Positions 1,511 to 30,120 of a stretch of 64,000 bases of DNA are shown one piece after another; positions within the stretch are counted from its first letter, which is position 1; every line of letters begins with the position of its first letter. Both the position numbers and the translations under genes were made by a program. The stretch lies in IMG/VR virus record IMGVR_UViG_3300032293_002041, positions 62,001-126,000 of that record. The stretch is one strand, 5' to 3'. The notes under the pieces were generated by a model. The model searched no databases. It was not told where the DNA came from and saw nothing but the letters and a program-made list of their open reading frames with translations.

Positions 1511-2569
1511 ATGAACATACATTTACAGGCTCCTATTGGAGCAACAGGATATGGTAATGCAGCTCTGAATATACTAAAAGAAATAAATCGGGATCACGAT
1601 GTCTGCTTAACATCAATAGGAAATCCTCAGATTGAAAATAAGTCTGATGAAGATACTGTCCGCAGATGCATCAATAAACAAGTTAGCGTCCCGTACGATG
1701 CTGTATCAGTAAAAATATGGCATCAGTTCGATCTATTGAATAGATTAGGGCGAGGTAAATACTATGCATACCCCTTTTTTGAAATAGATACCTTCAATGC
1801 CTTAGAAAAACACCATCTTAATTTTCCAGATGAAATAATAGCTAGTAGTCAGTGGGCAAAACAAATATTGATTGATAATGGAATAGACAGACCAATAGGT
1901 ATTGTTCCTCTTGGAGTTAATCCTGATATTTTTTATCCCATTGAAGTAAAGAATAAACCCAAAAATTTTATTTTTATTACAATCGGCAAATGGGAAATTA
2001 GAAAAGCACATGATATTGTAATAGAGTGTTTTAATAATGCTTTCAATAGAGAAGATAATGTTGAGCTTTGGATGATAACCCATAACCCATTCCTCAATAG
2101 TCACCAAGAAGGTGAATGGCTTAGTATGGTTCAAAAATCTAAGCTTAAAGATAAAATTAAAGTTTTTCCCAGACTATCCTCTCAATATGAGCTTGCTCAA
2201 GCTATTGCTTATGCTGATTGTGGACTTTATGTTTCTAGGGCAGAAGGATGGAATCTTGAGCTATTGGAAACCATGTCAATGAATAAACCGGTTATCGCAA
2301 CAGATTATTCAGCACACACCGAATTTTGTAATAATGATAACGCTAGTCTAGTATCTATAGATGAAACTGAAAAAGCAATAGATAATAAATGGTTTCATGG
2401 TAATGGTAATTGGGCTAAAATTGGACCCAAACAAAAAGAACAAATTATTAACTATATGAGAGATATCTATAGAAATAATATTAATACCAATCTTAATGGT
2501 GTTGAGACAGGCAAGAAATTTACTTGGAAAAATTCGGCTAAGGAACTACTCAGGTGTATACATGACTAA
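1511..2569 (+). CDS. Glycosyltransferase, GT-B/GT4-like
   Basis: TGYG at N-terminus, VPLGVNPDIF, IGKWEIRK, SRAEGWNLELLE (EX7E), PVIAT. Confidence 0.85.
   Translation: MNIHLQAPIGATGYGNAALNILKEINRDHDVCLTSIGNPQIENKSDEDTVRRCINKQVSVPYDAVSVKIWHQFDLLNRLGRGKYYAYPFFEIDTFNALEKHHLNFPDEIIASSQWAKQILIDNGIDRPIGIVPLGVNPDIFYPIEVKNKPKNFIFITIGKWEIRKAHDIVIECFNNAFNREDNVELWMITHNPFLNSHQEGEWLSMVQKSKLKDKIKVFPRLSSQYELAQAIAYADCGLYVSRAEGWNLELLETMSMNKPVIATDYSAHTEFCNNDNASLVSIDETEKAIDNKWFHGNGNWAKIGPKQKEQIINYMRDIYRNNINTNLNGVETGKKFTWKNSAKELLRCIHD
2553..2560 (+). promoter_or_regulatory. GGTGTATW motif (putative phage promoter)
   Basis: GGTGTATA 20 nt upstream of ATG 2581, followed by SD AAGGAG. The same motif recurs at other gene boundaries. 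Confidence 0.5.
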
Positions 2570-2580
2570 AGGAGATTTTT

Positions 2581-3144
2581 ATGCCAATACCACAACCACA
2601 CAAAGATGAAGATAGACAAAAATTCGTAGCTCGTTGCATGGGCGACGAGGTTATGAAAAAGGAATATCCCGAAGCAAAACAAAGAGTTGCAATATGTCTT
2701 GGTCAAAGCCAAACTAAAAAATCAAAAAATAGTCTATTAGATAATGTTTTGGCTGTTTTAGGTTTTACATATGATTTTGATTGCGAGGATTGTGGAAATT
2801 CTGAAGAATTGACAATATCAAACTTATCTATTCCTAAAGAAGAAGACTATATAGATGCTGGAGAAGTAAGTGAAGATTACGATATTTCACATATAGTAGC
2901 ATCAGAATATCAAGGAAAAAAAGTAACACTTAATAAATACTTCAGAACTCCAGATGGTCCGAAAAAATTTAGCGTTTATGTTAAGAACGAAAAGGGCAAT
3001 GTTGTTAAAGTAAATTTTGGCGACCCAAATATGGAAATCAAGAAAGATATTCCTGCAAGAAGAAAAAGTTTTAGGGCAAGAATGAGGTGTGATAATCCAG
3101 GACCAAAATGGAAAGCTCGTTATTGGGCATGTAAGAGCTGGTAG
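2581..3144 (+). CDS. Conserved phage hypothetical protein with basic C-terminal domain
   Basis: Good RBS. The C-terminal KKFSVYVK...VNFGDPNM...RRKSFRARMRC...ARYWAC domain resembles one common in large phages. Confidence 0.7.
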   Translation: MPIPQPHKDEDRQKFVARCMGDEVMKKEYPEAKQRVAICLGQSQTKKSKNSLLDNVLAVLGFTYDFDCEDCGNSEELTISNLSIPKEEDYIDAGEVSEDYDISHIVASEYQGKKVTLNKYFRTPDGPKKFSVYVKNEKGNVVKVNFGDPNMEIKKDIPARRKSFRARMRCDNPGPKWKARYWACKSW

Positions 3145-3180
3145 AACAACTTTATATTAACTACAAATGGATTAATAATT

Positions 3181-3711
3181 ATGATTAAATCGATTAATGA
3201 ACTATTAAAAGATCAAGAAACATCAAAAGCTCAACAAGTTGAAGGATATACATCTGACGCAGTAATTGAGTTACTCAAGAAATCACTAAATATTCACTGG
3301 CAACAGACCACCTCGCTTTCTGCACAAGCTGTTCATCTAGACAGATGGGGCTATAAAAAATTAGCGTCTATTCTTAAAGAAGACGCTAAAGAAGAACACG
3401 AACATGCTATGATTAATTTAGCAAGATTAGAATTTTTTGATGAAGACTATCAACCACTAGTGGTTCAACCTCCAGTCTGGAATAGGCACGATATACTTGC
3501 TATGATTAGATATAATCTATCTTCAGTTCAAGAAGCGTCCGCTGCTGAAAGAGCAACCATAGTTGCGGCTAGATCAACCGGTGATGAGATGACTGCAAAT
3601 ATCATGATACCTTTACTACAAGGTAGCGAAGATGGAATTGCTTTATATGAGGGATATCTTAAGCTTATTGAGCAAATGGGATTGGATAACTTTCTTAGTA
3701 TACAAGTATGA
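3181..3711 (+). CDS. Bacterioferritin-like protein with degenerate ferroxidase centre
   Basis: HLDRWGYKKL, EEHEHA..RLEF and C-terminal IEQMGLDNFLSIQ follow the Bfr pattern; several iron ligands are substituted. Confidence 0.75.
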   Translation: MIKSINELLKDQETSKAQQVEGYTSDAVIELLKKSLNIHWQQTTSLSAQAVHLDRWGYKKLASILKEDAKEEHEHAMINLARLEFFDEDYQPLVVQPPVWNRHDILAMIRYNLSSVQEASAAERATIVAARSTGDEMTANIMIPLLQGSEDGIALYEGYLKLIEQMGLDNFLSIQV

Positions 3712-4352
3712 TAAATCTTAACTCATTAATTAGATATAAAGAAATTGAATCATTAGGATATGGTACTACATATATAGAAGAACCTGTTCCTGATATAGTA
3801 GATTTTGATTGGAAAAAAATTTTAGAAGCACCACCGTCTAATATGAGCAAAGAGACTTTTTTGGAGCTACAATTAATATCACGAGCAACTTTGCAGAGAA
3901 CTTCTGAAGACACTAAACTAGTAGAGATTATAGATCAAGATACTGATAGTGTTTTTATTGAATTGCTTAATCAATATGGTCTGGAATATCCCCAACCCAA
4001 AATATTAGAATTCTATAGTATAATTAAACCTATTGTACTAAACGTAAAATACCTATGGAATAGACCAAGACCGGCACAATTGGCCAAATATTATGACTTA
4101 AATATTGACGTTATTGTTACAGACACTCATCATACAGCTGCTTATCCATCTGGACATACGGTGTATAGTAGTTTGATTTCTAATATTATTCAATATTATT
4201 ACCCGACAGTAGACAAAAAAAAATTAGACTCATTGGTCAAAGACACAGAAAAAGCGAGAATACTACAAGGCGTACATTATCCCTCAGATAACCTAGCTTC
4301 AATAAAATTAACTAAATTCCTATTTAACAAACTAAAAGAGAAAATATTATGA
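3708..4352 (+). CDS. PAP2-superfamily acid phosphatase / haloperoxidase-like
   Basis: KYLWNRPRP (KX6RP), YPSGH, ARILQGVHYPSD (RX5HX3D). Confidence 0.85.
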   Translation: MINLNSLIRYKEIESLGYGTTYIEEPVPDIVDFDWKKILEAPPSNMSKETFLELQLISRATLQRTSEDTKLVEIIDQDTDSVFIELLNQYGLEYPQPKILEFYSIIKPIVLNVKYLWNRPRPAQLAKYYDLNIDVIVTDTHHTAAYPSGHTVYSSLISNIIQYYYPTVDKKKLDSLVKDTEKARILQGVHYPSDNLASIKLTKFLFNKLKEKIL

Positions 4353-4840
4353 ACAGATTTTATCAGATTCTAGACTCAATACAATCTTTTGTATCAATTT
4401 CTAACGACAGCACATGTGCGTCTAACGATAACTTGGAAGAGTACAAACAAGATTTTTATGAGATGAATATAGGATCATTGAAAGCTATAGCCTCTCATGC
4501 TCAAGCAATATTAGATTCTGTCAACGACCCAAAAATTAAAGAAAACTTGACAGAAAGCTGGCTACAGGGTAAAATCGCTATCACAGAGGATTACATGCGC
4601 ACAATCCACGATTTTGTAAAGTATGTACCGTCGGATGACGATGATAGTTTAGCCAAAGACAAGACTGGATTATGGGACAATATCAGAAAGAAAAAAGAAA
4701 AAGAAGGCAAAAAATATCGTCCAGCAAAAAGGGGCGACGAAGATAGACCGGATCCCAAAATGTGGAAAAAATTAACACAAGGCAATAAGGTGTGTAGTCA
4801 TTGTGGACTAGCTACCGGATGCTGTATGTGTGGTGGATAA
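4349..4840 (+). CDS. Hypothetical protein
   Basis: ATGA-coupled ORF with a basic GLWDNIRKKK segment and a Cys-rich tail (CSHCG..GCCMC). Confidence 0.65.
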   Translation: MNRFYQILDSIQSFVSISNDSTCASNDNLEEYKQDFYEMNIGSLKAIASHAQAILDSVNDPKIKENLTESWLQGKIAITEDYMRTIHDFVKYVPSDDDDSLAKDKTGLWDNIRKKKEKEGKKYRPAKRGDEDRPDPKMWKKLTQGNKVCSHCGLATGCCMCGG

Positions 4841-4895
4841 TAGTCAGTTGATTTTAGGACATTAATTTACTTAGGACTTTTACAAAGGACAACCC

Positions 4896-5480
4896 ATGGA
4901 AAAAGAATATGATAGTCTGTCTACATATATAATTTTAGCTAAAAAGATTATATCAAAATTTGCACCAGGATTTTATTCTTCATTAAGACAAGAACTATTA
5001 TCTAATGAAGATGCAATAGCAGATATAGCATCCGCAATCATGATAGGAGACTGGAGATGGGACAAGGATAGAACCGGATTTGAGGGAAAGTCTAAGACTA
5101 AATATTCTTACAGAAATCAATGTGGCATATGGGCCATTAAGACATATCTATCTAATAAGTACAGGAAACAGAATAATCATTACTCTCTAGATAATATTAA
5201 TAAAGATCTTGATATTAGCTTTACAGATAATATTGAAGATAAACCAGAGTATGACCCATCATTAATAGCTGAACAAAATGAATATCATGAAGCACTAAAA
5301 GACAATATTGAAAATATCTTATCATGCGGACTCATATCAGAAAAGCAAAAAGAGCAGATAAAGCAATATTACTTTGAAGATAAGACTCTTTCTGAAATTG
5401 GTGCTAATTTTGGAGTTACTAGAGAAGCTATCAGACAAAATATTCAGAAGGGATTGTCAAAGATTAGAGAATATGTTTAA
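4896..5480 (+). CDS. Phage RNA polymerase sigma70-family factor
   Basis: C-terminal region 4 HTH: ISEKQKEQIKQYYFEDKTLSEIGANFGVTREAIRQ; region-2-like N-terminal half. Confidence 0.8.
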   Translation: MEKEYDSLSTYIILAKKIISKFAPGFYSSLRQELLSNEDAIADIASAIMIGDWRWDKDRTGFEGKSKTKYSYRNQCGIWAIKTYLSNKYRKQNNHYSLDNINKDLDISFTDNIEDKPEYDPSLIAEQNEYHEALKDNIENILSCGLISEKQKEQIKQYYFEDKTLSEIGANFGVTREAIRQNIQKGLSKIREYV

Positions 5481-5820
5481 TACAACAATATATTTATATG
5501 TAGTATCTTTCGATCTTGATAAAGATGAACAATGTTTTATTTCGATATCAGAAAACAGATTTATACCATTATCAATTAATTTAAATACTGATGATCTATC
5601 AATAGAGGAATATCTAGAAACTTTATTTGAACAAAATATTTCTTTGGCTTTTGGGTGGGTGAAAACTAAACTATTAGATGTTGTTAAGCAAAAGGAAAAT
5701 ATTAATATACATTACTCTTGTGTTGTCCCGCCTGACACCCCTCTCAAGAACTGTTATTATACTAGTGCAAATCTAGCTATTGTTAACCGTTTTGCAAGAA
5801 AAGCATTATTATATGTTTAA
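5473..5820 (+). CDS. Hypothetical protein
   Basis: ATG at 5473 overlaps the end of the sigma gene; in frame with ORF 5374..5820. Confidence 0.6.
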   Translation: MFNTTIYLYVVSFDLDKDEQCFISISENRFIPLSINLNTDDLSIEEYLETLFEQNISLAFGWVKTKLLDVVKQKENINIHYSCVVPPDTPLKNCYYTSANLAIVNRFARKALLYV

Positions 5821-6277
5821 ATTTTTATGGCAATTTTTCAATACCACTAAATTAGTAGGAAAAACAGAAGAGTTTGTTAAACCGACTGAAGAAGAAAAGG
5901 AAGAGCCAAAAGAAGACAAGCATTCTACTAAAATAGAAAAAGATTATTTGTGTAGTCTTAGTCTACAATTAAATTATGATGGTACAGTAAACATCATTTG
6001 TTATTGGCCTAGTTTTGAGAAACTAGAACCATCTATGATTGATTCAATTGCTAATCAATATGCTACTATGATATTTATGACAAACAATGGCCTATTAAAA
6101 AAGGATATAGTTGAAACTCTTTCTGATGTTTTGGGTTCGGAAGATCCATTTGACGCATATTTTGTTCATCAGGTATTAGCTAAGTGGTTAGAAATAACTG
6201 AAAAAACAGAGCAAACCCTAAATAGCAAACCATTCATCAAGCCGTCTAGTGTATTTAAAAACTATATGACTAAATAG
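5813..6277 (+). CDS. Hypothetical protein
   Basis: ATG at 5813 coupled to the upstream stop. Confidence 0.6.
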   Translation: MFKFLWQFFNTTKLVGKTEEFVKPTEEEKEEPKEDKHSTKIEKDYLCSLSLQLNYDGTVNIICYWPSFEKLEPSMIDSIANQYATMIFMTNNGLLKKDIVETLSDVLGSEDPFDAYFVHQVLAKWLEITEKTEQTLNSKPFIKPSSVFKNYMTK

Positions 6278-6301
6278 TTTACAACTAATAATAGGATCAA
6301 A

Positions 6302-6736
6302 ATGAGAAATGTCTATGGAGAAGATAATCTAATAGTTTGGCAAAAATGGTTTGATCCTTTTGGAGCAGACGATGAGGTTTCTATAGACCCTAGTATTAAT
6401 GAATCTAACAACATAGACGAAGAAGATGAGATTCCTGGCGTTGAAGATCAAATATCTCATCATCAAAAAATGAGAGCGATAGCTACCCCTATGGGTTTAA
6501 TCCCATATACAGAAAACACTGCTTCCAGTAAAATTTTTAATTTTTGGGTAGGTCATTCTAACTTCAATATTAATGAACATGTAATTGATATTATAGAAAA
6601 TACGGACGGCGTTGAAACCCTTGATGTATTTACTAGATATAGATTTAGAATAGCCATAGGGAAGGTTTTTGATGATGCAAAAGTAATGAAAGAGATTAAC
6701 GATCAAGTCTATAGGTACTTACATGGTAGCCAATAA
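6302..6736 (+). CDS. Hypothetical protein
   Basis: SD AGGA precedes ATG; 144 aa, co-oriented with neighbours. Confidence 0.65.
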   Translation: MRNVYGEDNLIVWQKWFDPFGADDEVSIDPSINESNNIDEEDEIPGVEDQISHHQKMRAIATPMGLIPYTENTASSKIFNFWVGHSNFNINEHVIDIIENTDGVETLDVFTRYRFRIAIGKVFDDAKVMKEINDQVYRYLHGSQ

Positions 6737-7394
6737 CGACACAGAACTTAATGACATTCATAATTTTAATATTAATCCAAAAACAAGAGAAGTATTTCTG
6801 CACTCATATTTAGATGGAGAAGAAGAAGGTGGTGTAGATTATAGATCAGCTGTAGTATTTGAAAAAAATATTAGATACCTAAATACTCTCTCAGATGAAT
6901 CTATACTAGTTCATATGCACCTTCCTGGAGGGGACTGGCAGGACTGCTTGGGTATTTATGATACCATAAGATTTTCTAAGGCAAAAATTATTATCTTAGC
7001 CTATGCTAAAGTAGAATCCTCAAGTAGCGTTATACTGCAAGCTGCGCCGCTAAGAGTTTTAATGCCAAATACCAATCTCATGATTCATTATGGATCATTT
7101 AGTATTGATGCAGAACATAGCAAAGCCGCTGCTGCTGGCATAAATTGGAATGAACAAGAGTGTGATAAAATGATTGATATTTTTACTGACCGATGTATGC
7201 AGAGCGAGATGGCTAAATTAAAAAATTGGAAAAGAATGATGGCTAAAAAACATATCACTTCACAACTGGCTAATAAGTGTGACTGGATACTAAAAGCACA
7301 AGAAGCAGTAGAATATGGATTCGCTGACGGTGTATTAGGAGATAAGAAATACTCAACTATAGATTCTCTTAAATCCTATAAGTTTAAAAAATGA
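6723..7394 (+). CDS. clpP: ClpP-like serine protease
   Basis: HLPGGD, VESSSSVILQA (nucleophile Ser region), MPNTNLMIH (catalytic His), DWILKAQEAVEYGFADGV. Confidence 0.8.
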   Translation: MVANNDTELNDIHNFNINPKTREVFLHSYLDGEEEGGVDYRSAVVFEKNIRYLNTLSDESILVHMHLPGGDWQDCLGIYDTIRFSKAKIIILAYAKVESSSSVILQAAPLRVLMPNTNLMIHYGSFSIDAEHSKAAAAGINWNEQECDKMIDIFTDRCMQSEMAKLKNWKRMMAKKHITSQLANKCDWILKAQEAVEYGFADGVLGDKKYSTIDSLKSYKFKK

Positions 7395-8044: not shown

Positions 8045-8091
8045 GTTTTAGGGTATACTAATAATAGTTTTCTAACACAATGGAGATTACC

Positions 8092-8634
8092 ATGGCAACA
8101 GCAAAAGTTAACGGTTCATCATATACTATTCCTCCAAATAGAAATGCTAGTGGCTCCCAAAATAATCGTGGTTCTGCTGCTAGAACAGGTTCTTCAAGCA
8201 CATTATCAACCGTATCTGTCTCAAGATACAATACAACAGTATTTGCTTCAACTGTTATTAATAACGGTTGGGCAGATAAGGCTGTTGATGCTGGCACATT
8301 TGCCTACAGCGATAGTAATGGCGTGGGAATGAGATATACCACAACACTAGCTGGCGTTAGCAACAATGCTTTACGAAGTGGCGCTGACGTTCCATCACTA
8401 GTTGAAGGTATTCATCGCCTAAGAGTTCTTAGAACACGCAGATTTACCACAGCAATTAGGGCCAACAAGTATAATAGATTTACTGGTCAATTCGAAGGCG
8501 GTTATCCAGTAGTAGCTAGTGACTCATTAGCAACTGACGTAGCTGCCACCCCAACCAGAGCAGTCCCAGGTAAAATTGTTTACAAGCTCGGCCAGCCTGT
8601 ACCATCTACTCAGAATTATTCATCTGAGTCTTGA
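8092..8634 (+). CDS. Putative virion structural protein (Ser/Thr/Ala-rich)
   Basis: GGAG SD before ATG 8092; composition typical of structural proteins; followed by a terminator. Confidence 0.55.
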   Translation: MATAKVNGSSYTIPPNRNASGSQNNRGSAARTGSSSTLSTVSVSRYNTTVFASTVINNGWADKAVDAGTFAYSDSNGVGMRYTTTLAGVSNNALRSGADVPSLVEGIHRLRVLRTRRFTTAIRANKYNRFTGQFEGGYPVVASDSLATDVAATPTRAVPGKIVYKLGQPVPSTQNYSSES

Positions 8635-8657
8635 TTATTACTATAAGTTTGTTGCAC

Positions 8658-8695
8658 AAAGGCCACTGATACCTATGGTGTCTGTGGCTTTTGTT
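8658..8695 (+). terminator. Intrinsic terminator
   Basis: AAAGGCCAC-TGATACC-TAT-GGTGTCT-GTGGCTTTT hairpin followed by a T-rich tract. Confidence 0.65.
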
Positions 8696-8713
8696 CTTTA
8701 ATGGAGAATAATT

Positions 8714-9028
8714 ATGCATGAAAGTCATGTCTGGCAAATATTAGCAACCACCTGTTTTGGTATTATCGTAACCCTAGTAACATTTTGGGCCACAATAGTA
8801 CGCAATATGGTAACTAAGTCAGAGATCGAAAATCTAATACAAACCCATTCTCCATATATGCAAGATAGGCAATTTATTATGGAGAGATTGGCCTCTAATA
8901 AAGAAACCCAAACAGCTTTTTCTAATGCTCTTCAAAGAAATACGGAAGTTATGACTGAGCTTAAAATCCAGATTGCAACACTTGGTAAAACATTAGAGGC
9001 TTTGGAAGATAGAATCGAAAGACCCTAA
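8714..9028 (+). CDS. Single-TM coiled-coil protein (holin/XhlA-like)
   Basis: N-terminal hydrophobic helix, C-terminal heptads (IATLGKTLEALEDRIE), GGAG SD. Confidence 0.45.
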   Translation: MHESHVWQILATTCFGIIVTLVTFWATIVRNMVTKSEIENLIQTHSPYMQDRQFIMERLASNKETQTAFSNALQRNTEVMTELKIQIATLGKTLEALEDRIERP

Positions 9029-9029
9029 A

Positions 9030-9042
9030 TGTGTATTTATAA
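9030..9042 (+). promoter_or_regulatory. GGTGTATW-like motif
   Basis: TGTGTATTTATAA directly after stop 9028, upstream of ATG 9081. Confidence 0.4.
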
Positions 9043-9080
9043 CTAGTTAAATTTATCATCAATTCAAATTGGAGATTAAA

Positions 9081-9302
9081 ATGTCAAGACCATTCACTGA
9101 TATAACAGTAGCTATTTCAGGTAATCCTATCAAAAACGGAACATTGGTTGATACTACTAGCAAAACTGGATATTATTCTCATTATGATCGTTATGTGCTC
9201 AATACTCCGGCTTCAGGCACTATAGCTAATAAGTATGGCTATAGATTTTATAATGGTATTTTTGTAGAATTAGTCGGCAACCAAACAGTAATAGGTGGAT
9301 AA
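9081..9302 (+). CDS. Small hypothetical (possibly structural) protein
   Basis: GGAG SD before ATG 9081. Confidence 0.55.
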   Translation: MSRPFTDITVAISGNPIKNGTLVDTTSKTGYYSHYDRYVLNTPASGTIANKYGYRFYNGIFVELVGNQTVIGG

Positions 9303-10455: not shown

Positions 10456-10469
10456 GGTGTATTATATAT
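10456..10469 (+). promoter_or_regulatory. GGTGTATW motif
   Basis: Intergenic GGTGTATTATATAT upstream of ATG 10504. Confidence 0.55.
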
Positions 10470-10503: not shown

Positions 10504-10836
10504 ATGGTCAAACCCGGCTATAGAACAAGTGAATTTTGGTTCACAGTAGTTAGCTTTATATTTAGCGGTTTATATCTAGTGGGAATTATTGGAGAAAATT
10601 CTCAAAAAGAAGATCTTATCCAAGAAACTACCAGAGGACTAGAAGCTACAATTCTTGTTATCGGACAATTAACGGTATTATTTAAATATATCAATGGAAG
10701 AACAGATCTGAAAAAGACTTGGTGGAATACAGCAACTCCAGAAGAAAGAAAAGAAGCAAATAAAAAGAACGATAAACCAGTAACAGTAAGAAAAAAGAGA
10801 AAAACAAATGGAAAACCAAAACCTACCAGTAAATGA
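10504..10836 (+). CDS. Holin-like two-TM protein
   Basis: KPGYRTSEFW followed by two hydrophobic helices and a highly basic C-terminal tail. Confidence 0.5.
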   Translation: MVKPGYRTSEFWFTVVSFIFSGLYLVGIIGENSQKEDLIQETTRGLEATILVIGQLTVLFKYINGRTDLKKTWWNTATPEERKEANKKNDKPVTVRKKRKTNGKPKPTSK

Positions 10837-13107: not shown

Positions 13108-13122
13108 GGTGTATTAATATAA
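13108..13122 (+). promoter_or_regulatory. GGTGTATW motif
   Basis: Intergenic GGTGTATTAATATAA upstream of ATG 13151. Confidence 0.55.
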
Positions 13123-13150: not shown

Positions 13151-13348
13151 ATGAGATTAATAGATAGAATAGCTCTAAATAGAGCAATCCAAATGGCTTT
13201 AAATTTTATCTTAGCTATTGTTAAGATGTTCGATAAAAGCACTCCAGAAGATAAGCCAGATGGTCCCGTTAAACCAAAACCATCGCCTAAACGCAGACCT
13301 TTAAAAGATCTGATAGATAATGTTGTCCCATGGAGAGAACAAAAATGA
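13151..13348 (+). CDS. Small hypothetical protein
   Basis: Amphipathic N-terminal helix and Pro/Lys-rich tail. Confidence 0.55.
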   Translation: MRLIDRIALNRAIQMALNFILAIVKMFDKSTPEDKPDGPVKPKPSPKRRPLKDLIDNVVPWREQK

Positions 13349-13689: not shown

Positions 13690-13691
13690 TC

Positions 13692-15885: not shown

Positions 15886-18798
15886 ATGGCTATATCTAAA
15901 TGGTGTGACATAAATTCATGGTTTAAAAATGATAATTTTTCAATACCTGCAAATAAAATTCCTATCAATGAGATTGATGATATAATTATAGAAGACAATG
16001 ATTATTTATTTAATGTTCTAGATAACTCATGTTATAGCCGTATTCCTTCTTTAGTTTGTAATAATTTATATGTCATCCCTGGTTTTCTTGATAATGTAGG
16101 AAATGATATAGATGTTATATTTTCTTGTCAAAAACTAATAGCCTCAAATGTTGTAATAAATTCTGGTATTATTTGTATAGATTGGGATAACAATATTTGC
16201 GAGTGGACTGTCAAATCATTCAGTGGATTCAATAAGTTTGTTAAATTATATTGTACATCAGAAGAAAACTTCTGGCTATCAAATAGTATATCTAGAGAAA
16301 TATATCTAAATTGTCCTCAATACATTTCTTTAAATGAGTGTACCTTCAACAAAGGACGTATACAAACAGAAAATGGTAAAATAAGTGGTACATCATTAAA
16401 TAATATAAATTTAATAGGCATTTATGATATAGTAAGTAGCGAGCTGATTAGTTGTACTGGCAATGGAGAATTTAAATTTTTAAATAATTCTAAAAATTCA
16501 TCAACTATATACGGAGATACATTATTTTTAGAAAGTAAGAATGATTCTAAAAGTATCATATATGGACCTAGTATTTTTTCTGGAATAAATAGCAGTATAA
16601 ATAGTGGTATTATTGTAGGTGATTGTACTTTTTTTAATTCACAAAATTTTGGTACAATATCGGGAAATGCAATTTTTACTAGTGGATCTATAAATAGCGG
16701 CGTTGTTACAAATGATGCTATTTTTTATTCTGGTACTATTAATTATGGAAATATTTTTGGAGATGCGATTTTTGAATATAGTAATAATTATGGTATGGTA
16801 TCTGGAAACGCTGTTTTAAATACAGGAAATAATTATGGTAAACTACTAGGTGGTTCTACATATATGTCATCTGGCTTGAATACCAAAGATGGTTTTATTA
16901 GCGGACTTCAAATTCAACTAATTAATTCTTCAAACGAAGGACAAATTAAATGTCCACTTGCTTCTACAGGAGCAGAGAGTTCTACTTGTTCTTTAATTGA
17001 ATCAGATAATCAAAATATTTTAGTTGCAAATACTATCAATACAAAGCGTATAATTACAACAGGCTACCCCAAACCATTCAATGGTCTATCGGGCACAATT
17101 ACTTGTGAGTCTATATCCATTGGAAGCGGATATTTTAATGGAGGAGATATAAGTTCTTTAGACTATACTTTTATGTCAACTTCTTCCAATGACGGTACGA
17201 TTGGTCCCGGAGTAGTTGTACCAATTTCAGAAACCACAAATAAACCAGATATTAGTAGGAGTTATCAGTCTGGAACTGTAGTATTTAATTCTGGTTGTCA
17301 TAACAATGGAATCATACTATCTCCATGTATATCAACTTTTAATAACGCTATTAATTTAGGAAATATTTCTGGCGGATGCATTTTTAATAAATTAAGCTAT
17401 AATTTATCAAGTATAAATGCTAATAATTATGATATTATTTATTTTAACGATATAAGCATTAATAAAGGTACTATATTATCTAGTTCTAGTCAAACAATTT
17501 TTAATGATAATTCATTAAATGATGGAACTATATACTCTTTTGTCTATTTTAATAATAGATCAAAAAATTCAGAGACAGGAAATATAAGATATGCTTCTTT
17601 TAAAGACTTATCACAAAACTCTGGCAGAATTGAAAATGGTTATTTTTTTAATGATGCAATTAATAATGGATTCATAACTAACAGTGGTGATTTCTTTGAC
17701 TCATCACAAAACCTATATCCAGCAAAGATTAGCGGTGTGGTTAATTTTTATAATGCTAGCATTAATTCTGGAGATATTAACTTAGCAAATGCTAAATTCT
17801 ACGATAACTCTAAAAACTATGACTATATATATGGTAACAGATCTAAATTATTTTTCGACAACTCACAGAATTTTGGATCTGTAAATAACGCTAAATTTTA
17901 TGACACGTCAGTAAATGTAAGGTTTCTGTTAGGAATTACTGAATTTTATAACAATAGTTCTAATAAGGGCTCATCTAGCTTTGATGATGATACATATTTC
18001 TATGATGACAGCACTAATAATGGACTAATAGATAAAGCTTTTTTCTTTGACCGAAGTACTAATCAGCATAATATAATAACATATAGTGGTCTTGATGGAT
18101 TAATTATATTTAATAATAGTTCACAAAATTTACAACCAATACAAAATAGAACAATTATTTTTAATGATACCAGCTCGAATCAAAGTACACTAAAAATTAT
18201 TCTAACACCTCAATATTCTCCTAGCGGTAATACTATTAACTTTAATACTCAGGCTGAGAATAGAAGCGAAATTATAGAATATAATTCAATTATTTTTTCT
18301 AGTGGAGCAGAGAATTACGGGGATATATCCGTTACTGGCACTGGCTGTATGCTAGTTTTTCAAGACGGTTCTATTAATTTAGGTTATATTAATATAAATA
18401 ATGATGTTCAATTTCAAAATGCAATAAATTCTGGTAGCATAAGAAATCAAGCACATTTTGAAGATAGCACAAATTTTGGAAAAGTTCCATATGCTACATT
18501 TAATAATAGTATTAATTCTGGTATAATTAACTATGGTATATTTATGCAAAATTCTACAAATTTAACTAATATAGCGAGTGGTGTATTTAATAATTCTAAT
18601 AATTCTGGCTATATTTTTCAAAACGGTATATTTAGCACTTATTCATCTAATCGAGGAAATGTAGGAAATAATGCAGATTTTACAGATTATTCAGCAAATT
18701 ATGGTATTATAAATGGAAATGGATCTTTTTTCACTTACTCATGCAATTATGGAACAGTACTAGGAGAGCTTCTGACAGATTCGTCGTGTACAGGTTAA
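15886..18798 (+). CDS. Asn/Ser/Gly-rich beta-solenoid repeat protein (putative virion fibre/adhesin)
   Basis: Many approximately 16-18 aa repeats of S.N.G.(I/V)..(A)..F, e.g. SQNFGTISGNAIF, SINSGVVTNDAIF, SNNYGMVSGNAVL. Confidence 0.65.
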   Translation: MAISKWCDINSWFKNDNFSIPANKIPINEIDDIIIEDNDYLFNVLDNSCYSRIPSLVCNNLYVIPGFLDNVGNDIDVIFSCQKLIASNVVINSGIICIDWDNNICEWTVKSFSGFNKFVKLYCTSEENFWLSNSISREIYLNCPQYISLNECTFNKGRIQTENGKISGTSLNNINLIGIYDIVSSELISCTGNGEFKFLNNSKNSSTIYGDTLFLESKNDSKSIIYGPSIFSGINSSINSGIIVGDCTFFNSQNFGTISGNAIFTSGSINSGVVTNDAIFYSGTINYGNIFGDAIFEYSNNYGMVSGNAVLNTGNNYGKLLGGSTYMSSGLNTKDGFISGLQIQLINSSNEGQIKCPLASTGAESSTCSLIESDNQNILVANTINTKRIITTGYPKPFNGLSGTITCESISIGSGYFNGGDISSLDYTFMSTSSNDGTIGPGVVVPISETTNKPDISRSYQSGTVVFNSGCHNNGIILSPCISTFNNAINLGNISGGCIFNKLSYNLSSINANNYDIIYFNDISINKGTILSSSSQTIFNDNSLNDGTIYSFVYFNNRSKNSETGNIRYASFKDLSQNSGRIENGYFFNDAINNGFITNSGDFFDSSQNLYPAKISGVVNFYNASINSGDINLANAKFYDNSKNYDYIYGNRSKLFFDNSQNFGSVNNAKFYDTSVNVRFLLGITEFYNNSSNKGSSSFDDDTYFYDDSTNNGLIDKAFFFDRSTNQHNIITYSGLDGLIIFNNSSQNLQPIQNRTIIFNDTSSNQSTLKIILTPQYSPSGNTINFNTQAENRSEIIEYNSIIFSSGAENYGDISVTGTGCMLVFQDGSINLGYININNDVQFQNAINSGSIRNQAHFEDSTNFGKVPYATFNNSINSGIINYGIFMQNSTNLTNIASGVFNNSNNSGYIFQNGIFSTYSSNRGNVGNNADFTDYSANYGIINGNGSFFTYSCNYGTVLGELLTDSSCTG

Positions 18799-21457: not shown

Positions 21458-22108
21458 ATGAATAATAACTATTATAATTTTTTCGATAGACAACCAATAG
21501 AGATATATGAAAATAGTCATCAACTTAGGCTAGATTATTTTGTTGAGGATTTTAAATTAAAACAACTTAATAACTTAAGAATTGGTGATTTTGGATGTGG
21601 ATATGGAATGTTGTACAATAGACTACCTAAGGATCAAAATAATACCTTCTATGGATGGGACGGATACGACAACAAAACAGCATCAGAAGTTTGCGAATAT
21701 TTTGTTACTAATCTTGATTCAAAATTTGCAGAAATATTTCTAGAAAAAAATGCACCAATTGATATTGCCTTTTGTCTAGAAACTATAGAACACGTAACTA
21801 ACCCATACAATTTATTGTTTGAGATCAAACAAATCTTAAAGCCTGGAGGAATTTTATATGTTACTATACCACATAGTAGCATCACTCACAATACTATTTA
21901 TCCAGGATTAATTTATCCTCCAGAAAATTTTGATACCTTTTTACGACAAATGGCTTTTGAAATTATGGACAGAAGAATACACCAAGCAGCTTTCGTACAG
22001 GTAGTATATACGTTGCGTAATTTAGGATGGGATTATTCAAAAATGTTATGGCCAAAACCAGAAGAAAAATTTAAAAATATTCCTCCTCATATATTTGTTA
22101 ATATTTAG
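21458..22108 (+). CDS. Class I SAM-dependent methyltransferase
   Basis: DFGCGYG, ETIEHV, ILKPGGILYVTIP. Confidence 0.85.
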   Translation: MNNNYYNFFDRQPIEIYENSHQLRLDYFVEDFKLKQLNNLRIGDFGCGYGMLYNRLPKDQNNTFYGWDGYDNKTASEVCEYFVTNLDSKFAEIFLEKNAPIDIAFCLETIEHVTNPYNLLFEIKQILKPGGILYVTIPHSSITHNTIYPGLIYPPENFDTFLRQMAFEIMDRRIHQAAFVQVVYTLRNLGWDYSKMLWPKPEEKFKNIPPHIFVNI

Positions 22109-22698: not shown

Positions 22699-22708
22699 AG
22701 AGCTTTTA

Positions 22709-25359: not shown

Positions 25360-25444
25360 AAATATTCCTATTCTTGTTTTACTTGGCTGTTTCTCTATAA
25401 TAAAAAAAGTCAATGAACCATCTACTTAAAAATCTAATAATAAA

Positions 25445-27401: not shown

Positions 27402-27409
27402 GTTTTTCC

Positions 27410-27438
27410 TTTACAATACTCATCGACTATCTTAGAAT
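27410..27438 (+). promoter_or_regulatory. sigma70-type promoter upstream of nrdJ
   Basis: TTTACA (27410-15), 17 nt spacer, TAGAAT (27433-38). Confidence 0.5.
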
Positions 27439-27453
27439 ACTACATGATCACAC

Positions 27454-27461
27454 GGTGTATA
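27454..27461 (+). promoter_or_regulatory. GGTGTATW motif
   Basis: Intergenic GGTGTATA upstream of ATG 27500. Confidence 0.5.
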
Positions 27462-27499
27462 TCAGAACAACAGCTTATTCATAATCTCTAGGAGACAAA

Positions 27500-29692
27500 A
27501 TGTCAGCACTACAAGAGCTTCAAAATTACACTTTCGTCAGTAAATATGCTAGATGGTTAAGTGATCAAAATAGGCGAGAGACTTGGAAAGAAGCTGTTGA
27601 TAGGGTCAGAGAAATGATGCACATCAGGTATGACTCTTTTGGAATTAGCGAAGAGATTGATTGGGCTTACGACATGATGTATAAGAAAAAGGTTCTTGGC
27701 AGTCAAAGAGCTTTGCAGTTCGGCGGAGATCCTATCCTAAAAAGACACGCTAAAATATATAACTGTACTAGTTCATATTGTGATAGGTTAAGATTTTTTC
27801 AAGAATGTTTTTGGCTGTTGCTGTGCGGAAGCGGTACAGGATTCAGTGTTCAAAAGCATCATGTATCTAAGCTACCATCACTAGAGCATGAGGTGCAAGA
27901 TGGACAAGCTACTAAGTATGTTATCGAAGATAGTATCGAAGGCTGGGCAAATGCTTTGGGCGTTCTGTTAAGCTCTTATTTTAGCAAACCAGTAGATGAA
28001 TTTAAGCAGTATAAGAATAGTCATATAGTATTCGATTACTCAAGTATTAGACCAAAGGGAGCAGCACTAGCTTCTGGAGTAGGCAAAGCTCCGGGCTATG
28101 AACCTCTTGCAAATGGCTTAGAAAAAATTAGAACACTATTAGATAGATGTATTAAGGACGGCCAAAAGAAACTTAGGCCCATAGATGCATATGACATTGT
28201 GATGCATAGTAGCGATGCTGTATTGTCTGGAGGTGTACGCCGAAGTGCTTCATTAGCTCTATTTAGTCATGATGATGAGGATATGGCTAAGGCTAAGACA
28301 GGAAATTGGTACATAGATAATCCTCAAAGAGCAAGAAGTAATAATTCTGCCTTACTGCTAAAAGATTCAACATCTTTTGAAGAATTTTCCACACTGATGC
28401 AATCTGTCAAGGAGTTTGGCGAACCGGGATTTATCTGGAGTGAATCAACAGAGATGATTTTTAATCCATGCGTTGAAATTGGTATGTGGCCAATAGATGA
28501 ACAAACAAATAAATCAGGATGGCAGGGATGTAATCTATCTACAATCAATTGCTCATCAGTAGCCGACGAAGAAGATTTTTATGAATCATGTAAAGCTGCA
28601 GCTATTATAGGAACACTCCAAGCTGGTTTTACCACGCTAGACTATTTAGGAGACATTAGTCAAAGAATCTTTGAAAGAGAAGCTCTTCTTGGAGTATCCT
28701 TAACAGGAACCATGGAAAAACATGAGTTAGTATTATCAGAAAAAGTCCTTACTAAAGGAGCAAAGATCGCTGTAGAAACAAACAAGAAGATAGCATCTAA
28801 GATCAATATTAACCAAGCTGCAAGAGTAACTTGTTTAAAGCCAGAGGGGACTTCTTCTAGTATGCTAGGAACTAGTTCTGGAATCCATCCTCATCATGCA
28901 AAGAGATACATTCGCCATGTACAAGCTAATGTTCTTGAAGCGCCCTATCTATACTTTAAGAAATTAAATCCTCAAGCTTGTGAAAAATCAGTTTGGTCAG
29001 CGAATAATACTGACGAGGTAGTTAAATTTCCAATAGAGGTTCCAGATGGAGCCAAACTTAAGAATCAATTACCCGCTGTAGAGATGCTCAAGGTTGTAAA
29101 AGATACACAAAAGAACTGGGTGCAGTCTGGCAAGAATAGATCATTATGTACACAAGAATATTTAAGTCATAATGTTAGCAATACTGTCACAGTTAAACCA
29201 GAAGAGTGGGATTCTGTAACCAAGTATATTTATGATAATCGAAAATATTTTGCAGGGATATCTCTAATACCACAGAGTGGAGACAAAGATTATCCTCAGG
29301 CTCCGTTTACAACTGTTTATACTAGTAGAGAAATTGTTAAGGAATATGGAGATGCTGCACTATGGTGTTCTGGATTAATTGAACTAGGATTAAATGCATT
29401 TAATAATAATCTATGGGCAGCTTGCGATTATGTTTCGATGAATCAAGCAAAAGAAGGCGACGACGAACATAAGTTAAAGTTCATGAACAAGATGAAAAAT
29501 TTTGCTGTAAAATATTTTGAAGATGACATAAAGAGATTAACATATTGTATGAAAGATGTTTACAACTGGAAGATCTACTGCGATCTATTTGAGAGCTTTA
29601 AGAAGGTAGACTATACCCAGCTCTCCGAAACAGAAGACAACACTGCTGGTATTGAAGAGATTAGTTGTGCTGGTGGAGCATGTCTTCTATAA
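27500..29692 (+). CDS. nrdJ: Class II (adenosylcobalamin-dependent) ribonucleotide reductase, monomeric RTPR type
   Basis: KYARW...RRETW, YNC, GGVRRSA, NPCVEI (radical Cys), GCNL, KPEGT, C-terminal CAGGAC; no NrdB nearby. Confidence 0.85.
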   Translation: MSALQELQNYTFVSKYARWLSDQNRRETWKEAVDRVREMMHIRYDSFGISEEIDWAYDMMYKKKVLGSQRALQFGGDPILKRHAKIYNCTSSYCDRLRFFQECFWLLLCGSGTGFSVQKHHVSKLPSLEHEVQDGQATKYVIEDSIEGWANALGVLLSSYFSKPVDEFKQYKNSHIVFDYSSIRPKGAALASGVGKAPGYEPLANGLEKIRTLLDRCIKDGQKKLRPIDAYDIVMHSSDAVLSGGVRRSASLALFSHDDEDMAKAKTGNWYIDNPQRARSNNSALLLKDSTSFEEFSTLMQSVKEFGEPGFIWSESTEMIFNPCVEIGMWPIDEQTNKSGWQGCNLSTINCSSVADEEDFYESCKAAAIIGTLQAGFTTLDYLGDISQRIFEREALLGVSLTGTMEKHELVLSEKVLTKGAKIAVETNKKIASKININQAARVTCLKPEGTSSSMLGTSSGIHPHHAKRYIRHVQANVLEAPYLYFKKLNPQACEKSVWSANNTDEVVKFPIEVPDGAKLKNQLPAVEMLKVVKDTQKNWVQSGKNRSLCTQEYLSHNVSNTVTVKPEEWDSVTKYIYDNRKYFAGISLIPQSGDKDYPQAPFTTVYTSREIVKEYGDAALWCSGLIELGLNAFNNNLWAACDYVSMNQAKEGDDEHKLKFMNKMKNFAVKYFEDDIKRLTYCMKDVYNWKIYCDLFESFKKVDYTQLSETEDNTAGIEEISCAGGACLL

Positions 29693-30118
29693 ATGAATAC
29701 CATCAAATATAAAAAATTAGACCCAAAAGCTATTGTGCCATTAAGGGCTAATCCAACTGATGCTGGTGCAGACCTATTCTCTATAGAAGATATTGAATTA
29801 TTACCAATGTCCAGAGTTTTGATTAAAACTGGACTAAGTATAGAAATTCCAGAAGGATATTATGGGCGAATTGCTCCTAGGTCTGGCCTTGCGTTTAAAA
29901 ATGGTATAGATGTACTAGCTGGCGTTATAGATTCATCCTACAGAGGCGAGCTGTGTACCCTATTGTTGAATACCGGATCCAACTCATTCAGTATCAAAAG
30001 TGGAGACAGAATAGCTCAATTAATAATAGAAGCTCACTACAATATGAATTTTGAAGAAACATATGAATTACAGCAATCTAACAGGGGAATAGGAGGATTT
30101 GGCTCAAGCGGTGTATAA
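29693..30118 (+). CDS. dut: dUTPase (trimeric)
   Basis: AGADL, IAPRSG, GVIDSSYRGE, GDRIAQL, RGIGGFGSSG. Confidence 0.95.
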   Translation: MNTIKYKKLDPKAIVPLRANPTDAGADLFSIEDIELLPMSRVLIKTGLSIEIPEGYYGRIAPRSGLAFKNGIDVLAGVIDSSYRGELCTLLLNTGSNSFSIKSGDRIAQLIIEAHYNMNFEETYELQQSNRGIGGFGSSGV

Positions 30119-30120
30119 TA
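30110..30120 (+). promoter_or_regulatory. GGTGTATW motif overlapping the dut stop codon
   Basis: GGTGTATAATA upstream of phoH; also encodes G-V-stop, so it may be coincidental. Confidence 0.35.

What the first reader, a model, noticed from the sequence alone, without database searches (positions are those of the whole stretch)
2553..30120. Recurrent GGTGTAT(A/T) motif at gene boundaries: candidate promoter for the phage sigma factor
Seen: GGTGTATW at 2553, 10456, 13108, 27454 and 30110, with variants AGTGTATT (6248), GGGTATA (8051) and TGTGTATT (9030). Each lies about 20-50 nt upstream of a start codon, often in the few intergenic gaps, usually followed by an AT-rich tract and with no obvious -35 box. 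Copies also occur inside genes (4160, 7329, 18580). Inference: a middle/late promoter read by the sigma factor at 4896..5480, driving structural, lysis-like and nucleotide genes.
Basis: partly seen in the sequence, partly recalled or inferred. Interest (0 to 1): 0.65.

Follow-up and report, generated by a model that had tools for sequence, protein, structure and literature searches.

The report
Phage-specific GGTGTAT promoter motif
A short DNA word, GGTGTAT, sits just upstream of about twenty genes of an uncultured 229-kb freshwater phage and stays put in some 200 related phages, so it is very probably the phage's own middle/late promoter; which of the phage's two sigma-like proteins reads it is still open.

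Summary
GGTGTATW occurs 9 times in the window (3.7 expected). Five copies (2553, 10456, 13108, 27454, 30110) and three variants (6248, 8050, 9030) lie 20-48 nt upstream of co-directional start codons.

- **Genome-wide:** 11 of 19 copies lie within 60 nt upstream of a start (P about 1e-12) and 17 of 19 point with transcription. GGTGTAT ranks first of 140 same-composition words for being followed by a gene start.
- **Relatives:** in IMG/VR relatives the word is kept at the same intergenic gaps while the flanks diverge. An inserted opposite-strand gene carries its own inverted copy.
- **Architecture:** there is no -35 box. An AT-rich tract and a preferred T-A step 8 nt downstream fit a single-element, -10-like promoter.
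- **Chance copies:** 7329 is ClpP coding sequence that drifts synonymously. 4160, 18580 and 21976(-) match the chance expectation.

The link to the sigma factor at 4896-5480 is not shown. That protein is a true sigma-70-family member, but it keeps the -35-reading residues of primary sigmas and has no motif upstream. A second sigma-like gene outside the window (genome 207865-208530, minus strand) has an invariant GTGTA box in its own promoter, and I slightly prefer it. No transcription start data could be obtained.

The parts
2553..2560 (+). GGTGTATA, candidate promoter core. It lies inside the last codons of the GT4 glycosyltransferase gene, 20 nt upstream of the ATG at 2581.
   Evidence: A/G/T-GTGTAT is kept at the orthologous place in 16 of 21 distinct relatives while the flanks diverge.
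6248..6255 (+). AGTGTATT variant, 46 nt upstream of the ATG at 6302.
   Evidence: 10 of 20 distinct relatives have [GAT]GTGTA[TC] (Y = T or C) upstream of the orthologue.
8050..8057 (+). AGGGTATA variant in the 47-nt gap upstream of the ATG at 8092.
   Evidence: At the orthologous gap 17 of 29 relatives have GGGTAT and 8 of 29 have GTGTAT, so the two forms are interchangeable.
9030..9037 (+). TGTGTATT variant, 43 nt upstream of the ATG at 9081.
   Evidence: 14 of 36 distinct relatives carry A/G/T-GTGTAT there, namely those that have a gap.
10456..10463 (+). GGTGTATT in a 56-nt intergenic gap, 40 nt upstream of the ATG at 10504.
   Evidence: 28 of 57 distinct relatives keep it, 27 of them as exact GGTGTAT; where it is absent the gap is absent or different.
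13108..13115 (+). GGTGTATT in a 79-nt gap, 35 nt upstream of the ATG at 13151.
   Evidence: 25 of 38 distinct relatives have exact GGTGTAT. In L005, L012 and L029 a second, inverted copy serves an inserted minus-strand gene.
27454..27461 (+). GGTGTATA, 38 nt upstream of the class II ribonucleotide reductase gene (27500-29692). It lies 15 nt downstream of a sigma-70-like promoter.
   Evidence: It is present only in the closest relatives (6 of 60), so it is lineage-specific.
27410..27438 (+). Sigma-70-like promoter (TTTACA, 17 nt, TAGAAT) just upstream of the 27454 motif. Together they form a possible dual promoter for the RNR gene.
   Evidence: Consensus match only.
30110..30117 (+). GGTGTATA overlapping the stop codon of gene 29693-30118, 48 nt upstream of the TTG start of PhoH (30166-30900).
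   Evidence: 22 of 47 distinct relatives have exact GGTGTAT upstream of PhoH, namely whenever a gap exists.
4896..5480 (+). Sigma-70-family protein of 194 aa with sigma-2 and sigma-4 domains ('sigma1').
   Evidence: PF04545 scores 45.3 bits. TIGR02937 scores 59.7 bits, above its cut-off, over residues 16-193. The model has pLDDT 82 and Foldseek matches sigma factors from E 4e-4 at probability 1.00. It is a core gene of the clade.
4547..4575 (+). Sigma-70-like promoter (TTGACA, 17 nt, TAAAAT) inside gene 4349-4840, 320 nt upstream of the sigma gene. It is a possible early promoter for that gene.
   Evidence: Consensus match of 11 out of 12 positions. Conservation was not tested.
4160..4167 (+). 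Intragenic GGTGTATA, 181 nt from the next start. Judged coincidental.
   Evidence: Only 6 close relatives could be aligned, which is uninformative.
7329..7336 (+). Intragenic GGTGTATT inside the ClpP-like gene 6723-7394 (codons Gly-Val-Leu). Judged coincidental.
   Evidence: PF00574 match. Only 14 of 47 relatives keep the word; the others differ at synonymous positions.
18580..18587 (+). Intragenic GGTGTATT in the 970-aa gene, 248 nt from the next start. Judged coincidental.
   Evidence: No relative could be aligned.
21976..21983 (-). Judged coincidental.

Best explanation
(G/A/T)G(T/G)GTAT(A/T) is the core of the phage's own non-early (middle/late) promoter class. It is a single, -10-like element without a -35 box. 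It is followed by about 7 AT-rich, G-poor bases and a preferred T-A step, where transcription probably starts about 8 nt downstream of the word.

The phage has no detectable RNA polymerase of its own and encodes two sigma-like proteins. The promoters are therefore most likely read by host core RNA polymerase carrying a phage-encoded sigma.

Which sigma is unresolved. I put about 0.40 on the second sigma-like gene outside the window (genome 207865-208530, minus strand; 'sigma2') and about 0.25 on the sigma at window 4896-5480 ('sigma1').

- **Shown:** the positional, strand and evolutionary behaviour of the motif; the absence of a -35 box; the sigma nature of sigma1.
- **Inferred:** the promoter function, the start site, and the identity of the reading factor.
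For: **Positional enrichment and orientation.** 11 of 19 GGTGTATW lie within 60 nt upstream of a co-directional start (P = 1e-12) and 17 of 19 are co-oriented with transcription. GGTGTAT is the second most enriched upstream 7-mer in the genome. It is the top one in 2.64 Mb of relatives: 154 of 520 copies, a 7.3-fold enrichment. It ranks first of 140 same-composition words: 35% are followed by a ribosome-binding site (Shine-Dalgarno) and ATG against a mean of 5% in the genome, and 50% against 5% in relatives.

**Conservation at orthologous gaps.** The word is kept while flanks diverge: 16/21, 25/29, 14/36, 28/57, 25/38 and 22/47 at six sites. Five of the seven control genes that could be aligned in relatives (genes without the motif in the window) give 0 of 15 to 0 of 59. 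The other two give 1/18 and 2/23 for the loose [GAT]GTGTA[TC] pattern and 0 exact GGTGTAT.

**Strand specificity.** An inserted minus-strand gene in L005, L012 and L029 carries its own inverted copy back to back with the plus-strand one.

**Architecture.** There is no -35 signal in 97 non-redundant sites. At position +8 after the word T occurs in 62 of 97 sites, and the T-A step in 46 of 97.

**Separate early class.** Early promoters of the form TTGACA-N17-TAGAAT fill 220-229 kb and 1-60 kb.

**Genes served.** They include RNR, PhoH, portal and tail fibre.

**No phage polymerase.** No multisubunit RNA polymerase domains were found, with positive controls.

**Sigma proteins.** Sigma1 is a full sigma-70-family protein. 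For sigma2, all 39 members match PHROG 1740 'RNA polymerase sigma factor', region 2 aligns to sigma-B, and the best fold matches in PDB and BFVD are sigma factors.

**Pointers to sigma2.** Its operon promoter region keeps an invariant GTGTA box across all relatives examined, down to 53% protein identity, which suggests autoregulation. No region 4 helix-turn-helix is detectable by sequence, which suits a promoter without a -35 box.

**Precedent.** phiEco32 gp36 reads a single element, tAATGTAtA, with starts 6-8 bp downstream (PMC8948821).
Against: - No transcription start or expression data: no RNA run was listed.
- Only 1 of 24 sites has a recognisable terminator upstream, so most would be internal promoters in co-directional gene arrays.
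- 37-44% of sites read as a TATAAT-like hexamer starting at the TAT of the word. The early promoters also carry TG flush against their -10 hexamer. A host primary sigma reading them as extended -10 promoters is therefore not excluded.
- Sigma2 is below every curated cut-off (PF04542 20.6 bits against 24; TIGR02937 17.8 against 42.9), and its fold matches have E >= 0.008.
- Fold alignments span the whole length of sigma2, so a sigma-4-like C-terminal domain may exist.
- Neither sigma is demonstrably related to phiEco32 gp36.
- The 27454 site is kept in only 6 of 60 relatives.
Confidence: 0.62

Rival explanations
1. One reading: the motif is read specifically by the sigma factor encoded at window 4896-5480 (sigma1).
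For: Sigma1 is a confirmed sigma-70-family protein with sigma-2 and sigma-4 domains. It is a core gene of the clade and co-occurs with the motif. It lies among the densest group of motif sites (2.5-13 kb). It has no motif upstream of itself (0 of 34 relatives), as expected for a factor made from an earlier promoter class.
Against: Its region 4.2 recognition helix, T-R-E-A-I/V-R-Q, is invariant across 30 relatives. By my knowledge of E. coli sigma-70, it retains the equivalents of R584, E585, R588 and Q589, which read TTGACA. The motif class shows no -35 conservation at all, whereas the genome has about 60 promoters with a perfect TTGACA. There is no direct link of any kind.
Confidence: 0.25
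2. The sites are -35-independent, extended -10-type promoters read by the host's primary sigma. They would become dominant once a phage factor blocks -35 recognition, as I recall (not checked here) for the middle/late promoters of Thermus phage P23-45.
For: The word can be parsed as GGTG followed by TATwwt. 36 of 97 sites match TATAAT at 5 or more of 6 positions in that register. The early sigma-70-type promoters of the same phage also carry (G)TG flush against TAGAAT.
Against: The position equivalent to T-7, normally near-invariant, is T in only 43 of 97 sites. By contrast GG two turns upstream and T-10 are invariant. The TG is flush with the hexamer instead of one base away. The phage invests in two conserved sigma-like genes.
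Confidence: 0.2
3. The word acts at the RNA level, as a processing site or a binding site for a translational regulator in 5' leaders, and not as a promoter.
For: It shows the same strand bias and the same placement upstream of start codons. Most sites lie in co-directional arrays without upstream terminators.
Against: The distance to the start codon varies from 20 to 58 nt with no fixed relation to the ribosome-binding site. There is no conserved secondary structure around it. A copy sits between the -35 and -10 boxes of the sigma2 operon promoter, where it would not be transcribed from that promoter. The T-A step at a fixed +8 is typical of a start site.
Confidence: 0.07
4. The word is the binding box of a phage activator (MotA-like sigma appropriation) that works with a separate -10 element downstream.
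For: It is a short asymmetric box, as in T4 middle promoters. At the sigma2 operon a TATAAT lies 6-10 nt downstream of the box.
Against: In 97 sites no -10-like hexamer is enriched at any fixed offset of 10-14 nt downstream. The only enriched register overlaps the word itself.
Confidence: 0.05
5. The motif is a chance or composition artefact.
For: The total count of GGTGTAT in the genome (26) is about what base composition predicts. Four window copies look coincidental.
Against: The evidence is the positional P values of 1e-12, the first rank among 140 same-composition words and the conservation at orthologous gaps across the clade.
Confidence: 0.01

Closest known systems
Middle/late promoters of coliphage phiEco32, read by the phage sigma gp36 (consensus tAATGTAtA)
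   Same: Both have a single short conserved element with no -35 box. They share the TGTAT(A) core. [quoted passage not shown] In both, host core polymerase is combined with a small phage sigma.
   Different: Here GG(T/G)G precedes TAT, where phiEco32 has tAAT. Neither sigma of this phage is detectably homologous to gp36 (hhalign probability 2-3%). This phage is an unrelated 229-kb genome whose terminase is 24% identical to Bacillus and Microcystis siphophages. No experimental data exist.
T4 late promoters (TATAAATA), read by gp55 with gp33 and the sliding clamp (from established knowledge; not tested here)
   Same: An 8-bp, -10-only element serves structural genes. The sigma-like reader has mainly a region 2 domain.
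   Different: The sequence differs. TATAAATA is not among the enriched upstream words. Only 2 of 39 sigma2 homologues touch the 'late sigma transcription factor' PHROG 234, weakly at E 0.005. No gp33 or gp45 partners were sought.
Extended -10 (TGn-TATAAT) promoters of primary sigma factors, including my recollection (not checked here) of the -35-less middle/late promoters of Thermus phage P23-45
   Same: Both lack a -35 box and have TG next to a TAT-starting hexamer. 37-44% of sites resemble TATAAT in that register.
   Different: The TG is flush with the hexamer. GG upstream is invariant. The T-7 equivalent is not conserved (44%).
Autoregulated ECF-type sigma factors (general knowledge)
   Same: Sigma2 has an ECF-like region 2. 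Its own operon promoter carries the GTGTA box in all relatives examined.
   Different: ECF promoters are bipartite with a strong -35 box. Sigma2 has an insertion with four invariant cysteines and no detectable region 4 motif.

Membership tests
Single-element (-10-only) promoters read by a phage-encoded sigma (phiEco32 gp36 type, T4 gp55 type) | A short conserved element recurs upstream of non-early genes, on the transcribed strand. | tested here: met
   The genes served include RNR, PhoH, portal and tail fibre.
Single-element (-10-only) promoters read by a phage-encoded sigma (phiEco32 gp36 type, T4 gp55 type) | No conserved -35 element. | tested here: met
   Information content is below 0.2 bit at every position from -60 to -1 in 97 non-redundant sites. 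The same holds in 18 sites of this genome, allowing for the small sample.
Single-element (-10-only) promoters read by a phage-encoded sigma (phiEco32 gp36 type, T4 gp55 type) | Transcription starts 6-9 bp downstream of the element. | not testable with these tools
   No RNA run was listed. The only indirect evidence is a T-A step at +8/+9 in 46 of 97 sites.
Single-element (-10-only) promoters read by a phage-encoded sigma (phiEco32 gp36 type, T4 gp55 type) | Activity depends on the phage sigma. | not testable with these tools
   This needs in vitro transcription or a reporter assay.
Single-element (-10-only) promoters read by a phage-encoded sigma (phiEco32 gp36 type, T4 gp55 type) | The reading sigma is homologous to gp36 or gp55. 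| tested here: not met
   hhalign of A1 and A2 against gp36 gives probabilities of 3.4% and 1.9%. PHROG 234 is touched by only 2 of 39 members at E 0.005. The resemblance is therefore functional analogy only.
Sigma-70 family sigma factor (protein at window 4896-5480) | Region 2 and region 4 domains score above curated thresholds. | tested here: met
   TIGR02937 scores 59.7 bits (cut-off 42.9) over residues 16-193. PF04545 scores 45.3 bits (cut-off 24.1). Foldseek matches sigma factors at probability 1.00 over about 240 columns.
Sigma-70 family sigma factor (second candidate, genome 207865-208530, minus strand) | Region 2 and region 4 domains score above curated thresholds. | tested here: inconclusive
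   PF04542 scores 20.6-22.9 bits (cut-off 24) and TIGR02937 17.8 bits (cut-off 42.9), with no region 4 hit. PHROG 1740 is matched by 39 of 39 members. All best fold matches are sigma factors, but with E from 0.008 to 0.03.
Canonical sigma-70 -35/-10 promoter | A TTGACA-like box lies 16-18 bp upstream of the -10 hexamer. | tested here: not met
   Such promoters exist in this genome as a separate class.
Extended -10 promoter of a primary sigma | TG lies one base upstream of a hexamer with conserved A-11 and T-7. | tested here: not met
   The TG is flush with TAT. The T-7 equivalent is T in 43 of 97 sites. The register is inferred, not measured.

The most novel reading that the evidence does not exclude
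An uncultured clade of freshwater jumbo phages runs a two-sigma programme on host core polymerase.

- **Sigma2** is a divergent sigma with a four-cysteine (probably zinc-binding) insertion and a degenerate C-terminal domain. It would switch itself on through a GTGTA box embedded in its own sigma-70-type promoter, and it would read the -35-less GGTGTAT promoters of nucleotide-metabolism and virion genes.
- **Sigma1**, the window's sigma, keeps a sigma-70-like -35-reading helix. It would take over the phage's many TTGACA promoters from the host sigma.
Probability: 0.25. Interest if true: 0.6.

Novelty: new member of a known kind. Interest (0 to 1): 0.42.

Why it matters
The motif gives a testable transcription map for a widespread but uncultured group of about 230-kb freshwater phages that have no close cultured relative.

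- It divides the genome into a host-type early class (TTGACA-N17-TAGAAT) and a phage-specific class (GGTGTAT).
- It marks operon starts and corrects at least one gene start (PhoH begins at the TTG at 30166).
- It names two candidate sigma factors whose specificities can be tested with simple in vitro or reporter assays.
- It adds another case to the small set of -35-independent promoters that depend on a phage sigma. The core (TGTAT) resembles that of phiEco32 although the sigmas are not detectably related.

Tried and rejected

**Close relatives in GenBank phages.** There was no DNA match. Sigma2 has no tblastn match. Sigma1 matches only region 4 of Vibrio phage sigmas.

**Terminator-then-promoter arrangement as support.** Only 1 of 24 sites has an upstream hairpin followed by a T-run, so this argument was dropped.

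**A third promoter motif.** Other enriched upstream words in relatives (for example CTCACGGA, ATGTTTCC, CCATGGAG) turned out to be conserved 3' coding ends of single orthologous genes. TTAGGAC upstream of sigma1 is specific to that leader: 5 of 84 copies lie near starts.

**A MotA-like box with a downstream -10 element.** No fixed-offset hexamer was found.

**A phage RNA polymerase.**
- There are no beta or beta' Pfam domains, with positive controls.
- The T7-type model rang nowhere, not even in the controls, so it says nothing.
- phiKZ-like divergent subunits would escape these models.

**Homology of the sigmas.** Neither is significantly similar to the other or to phiEco32 gp36.

**Literature.** A search for the word itself returned only primer sequences. 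No paper on this clade or motif was found.

**Big protein searches.** I did not run them, because both sigma candidates were already placed by family scans.

Full report
**Context.** The window is bases 62001-126000 of a single 228,972-bp IMG/VR virus record with direct terminal repeats, rated complete, at 35.6% G+C. It has no DNA match among GenBank phages. About 200 related contigs exist in IMG/VR (208, 189 and 185 confirmed matches to three different genes). Its terminase is only about 24% identical to those of Bacillus (Basilisk-like) and Microcystis phages. A home-made gene call gives about 284 genes (after dropping calls under 120 nt from the 301):
- a plus-strand block from about 220 kb through the ends to about 116 kb;
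- a minus-strand block (116-208 kb) holding terminase, portal, tail fibres and giant ORFs.

In the window I could name the following genes:
- IMPDH/GMP reductase (371-1507);
- a GT4 glycosyltransferase (1511-2569);
- the sigma factor (4896-5480);
- a ClpP-like protease (6723-7394);
- class II RNR (27500-29692);
- PhoH (30166-30900);
- a replication module at 33-45 kb: RecA with a LAGLIDADG insert, DnaB, primase, a PD-(D/E)XK nuclease and a split Pol III alpha.

Most genes directly behind the motif have no family match.

**The observation.** GGTGTATW occurs 9 times in the window against 3.7 expected, at exactly the stated places plus one antisense copy at 21976. Five copies and three one-base variants lie 20-48 nt upstream of a co-directional start codon.
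- Genome-wide there are 19 copies. Of these, 11 lie within 60 nt upstream of a start (3% expected, P = 1e-12) and 17 point the same way as local transcription.
- The total number of copies is about what composition predicts, so the signal is where they lie, not how many there are.
- In an unbiased count of all upstream 6-, 7- and 8-mers, GGTGTA/GGTGTAT is second only to TTGACA.
- Among the 140 permutations of the same seven letters, GGTGTAT is first for being followed within 12-65 nt by a ribosome-binding site, an ATG and an open frame. The figure is 35% against a mean of 5%.

**Comparative evidence.** I fetched 240 loci from relatives around three genes. In the 2.64 Mb from the first two sets (160 loci), GGTGTAT is by far the most enriched upstream 7-mer (154 of 520 copies, 7.3-fold). 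It is again first of the 140 permutations (50% against 5%).

At orthologous gaps the word is kept while the flanks change:

| Site (window) | Distinct relatives keeping the word |
|---|---|
| 2553 | 16 of 21 |
| 8050 | 25 of 29 (GGGTAT or GTGTAT) |
| 9030 | 14 of 36 |
| 10456 | 28 of 57 |
| 13108 | 25 of 38 |
| 30110 (PhoH) | 22 of 47 |
| 27454 (RNR) | 6 of 60 |

- Where the word is missing, the gap is usually missing too.
- Of the seven window genes without the motif that could be aligned in relatives, five give 0 of 15 to 0 of 59. Two give 1 of 18 and 2 of 23 for the loose [GAT]GTGTA[TC] pattern and no exact GGTGTAT.
- One gene (8714) has the word in 15 of 44 relatives where the window has a hairpin instead.
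- In L005, L012 and L029 a small gene inserted on the opposite strand brings its own AGGTGTAT, back to back with the plus-strand copy. That is what a strand-specific promoter predicts.
- The copy at 7329 is different. It encodes Gly-Val-Leu of ClpP, and 33 of 47 relatives replace it with synonymous or similar codons.
- Copies 4160, 18580 and 21976(-) have no support. Four coincidental copies match the 3.7 expected.

**Anatomy.** Ninety-seven sites from relatives with less than 60% flank identity show no information upstream (no -35 box). They show invariant GGTGTAT by construction, then a G-poor AT-rich stretch. T occurs at the eighth base after the word in 62 of 97 sites, and the dinucleotide T-A at +8/+9 in 46 of 97. 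The first base may be G, A or T, and the third T or G. In the register where TAT opens a -10 hexamer, 36 of 97 sites match TATAAT at 5 or more of 6 positions, but the last position is T in only 43 of 97. I read this as a -10-like single element with a start about 8 nt downstream. The start site is an inference.

**Other promoters.** About 60 sites of the form TTGACA-N16-18-TA(G/T)A(A/C)T lie at 220-229 kb and 1-60 kb, the region of small genes and 11 tRNA genes. Many have CGATAAT in the spacer and (G)TG flush against the hexamer. In the window, sigma-70-like consensus matches are no more frequent than in shuffles (98 against 102). The good ones are at 4547, 27410 and 45337. There are thus at least two promoter classes, and they interleave between 37 and 60 kb.

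**Who reads the motif.** No beta or beta' polymerase domains are present, and the T7-type search was uninformative. The genome has two sigma-like genes.

*Sigma1* (window 4896-5480):
- It passes curated thresholds as a sigma-70-family protein over its full length, and it folds like one.
- Its region 4.2 helix, T-R-E-A-I/V-R-Q, is invariant in 30 relatives.
- By my knowledge of E. coli sigma-70 it keeps the -35-reading residues, which fits TTGACA promoters better than a class without a -35 box.
- Its own leader carries no motif, but a conserved TTTAGGAC element.

*Sigma2* (genome 207865-208530, minus strand, outside the window):
- It heads the block that continues into terminase and portal.
- All 39 homologues match PHROG 1740, and its N-terminal half aligns to regions 1.2-2.4 of sigma-B.
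- Its best fold matches are sigma factors, but every score is sub-threshold.
- It has four invariant cysteines between its two helical domains and no detectable region 4 motif.
- Upstream of its two-gene operon, all relatives examined, down to 53% identity, keep TTGACA, then 2-5 nt, then (N)GTGTA(A/T/C), then 6-10 nt, then TATAAT. The distant ones have perfect G/TGTGTAT and a decayed -35 box. This looks like a host-type promoter with the phage motif embedded, that is, autoregulation.

On this basis I slightly prefer sigma2 (0.40) over sigma1 (0.25). The host primary sigma stands at 0.20. None of this is shown.

**Comparison with known systems.** The nearest precedent is phiEco32. Its six middle/late promoters share the single element tAATGTAtA, start 6-8 bp downstream and are read by the phage sigma gp36, which lacks region 4 homology (PMC8948821). 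The core TGTAT(A), the missing -35 box and the inferred start distance agree. The upstream half differs, and neither sigma here is detectably related to gp36. So this works like that system but is not a member by descent. T4 late promoters (gp55) and extended -10 promoters are more distant analogies. No paper in the held library describes this motif or clade.

**Verdict.** The promoter reading is well supported by position, strand and evolutionary conservation, but it lacks any transcript evidence. The assignment to the window's sigma factor is unproven and, in my judgement, not the likeliest. This is a new member of a known kind (phage-specific single-element promoters) in an unstudied phage clade. 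It is useful and testable, but not surprising to a specialist.

Noticed in passing
Outside the window: genome 207865-208530 (-), read as L092:12865-13530 (-): A second sigma-like gene (221 aa) has four invariant cysteines (C102, C105, C119, C128) between an ECF-like region 2 and a short C-terminal helical domain. It is preceded by a conserved small ORF of about 45 aa that overlaps its start. It is a core gene in 189 IMG/VR relatives.
   Followed up: partly
Outside the window: genome 220-229 kb and 1-60 kb (for example L083:1695-1723 and L093 throughout): About 60 sigma-70-type promoters of the form TTGACA-N17-TAGAAT. Roughly half carry a conserved (C)CGATAAT(A) inside the spacer, 3-5 nt after the -35 box. 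That subclass stops at about 51 kb. The meaning of the spacer box is unknown.
   Followed up: partly
Window 4850-4895: The leader of the sigma gene carries TTTAGGAC(A/T)TT, once or twice, 18-35 nt before the ATG. It is conserved in most relatives but is not found upstream of other genes. It may be a gene-specific operator or RNA element.
   Followed up: partly
Window 8655-8700: A conserved hairpin with a T-run lies just before the ribosome-binding site of gene 8714-9028. In 15 of 44 relatives the same gap instead holds a GGTGTAT or AGTGTAT word. In L013 the word sits in the hairpin loop.
   Followed up: partly
Window 55128-63278 (-) and 63281-64000 (-, continuing beyond the window to an ORF of 1819 aa): Giant ORFs of 2716 aa (no Pfam match) and 1819 aa. 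Outside the window the same strand holds ORFs of 7733 aa (genome 136787-159988), 4061 aa (171683-183868) and 1441 aa.
   Followed up: partly
Window 33397-35445 (+): A RecA-like protein of 682 aa has a LAGLIDADG domain (residues 275-344) between its parts, which suggests an intein or a homing-endonuclease insertion.
   Followed up: no
Window 40942-42816 (+) and 43712-45340 (+): DNA polymerase III alpha appears split into two genes (PHP plus NTPase domains; finger plus HhH plus OB domains). Two small genes (42819-43016 and 43021-43719) lie between them.
   Followed up: no
Outside the window: genome 12926-14584 and 187039-188471: Two islands of 48-51% G+C lie in a 35.6% genome. Each holds an ORF of about 340-350 aa that my codon-usage gene call skipped. 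They may be mobile or foreign inserts.
   Followed up: no
Window 30127 versus 30166: The longest-ORF start of PhoH (ATG at 30127) has no ribosome-binding site. The relatives examined (for example L247) and the AAGAAGGG box point to the TTG at 30166 as the true start.
   Followed up: yes
Outside the window: genome 8.5-17.4 kb and 36.6 kb (L083, L085): Eleven tRNA genes (Arg, Asp, Thr, Gln, Asn, Ser, Tyr, Glu, Lys, Gly, Ile) are interleaved with the early promoters.
   Followed up: no
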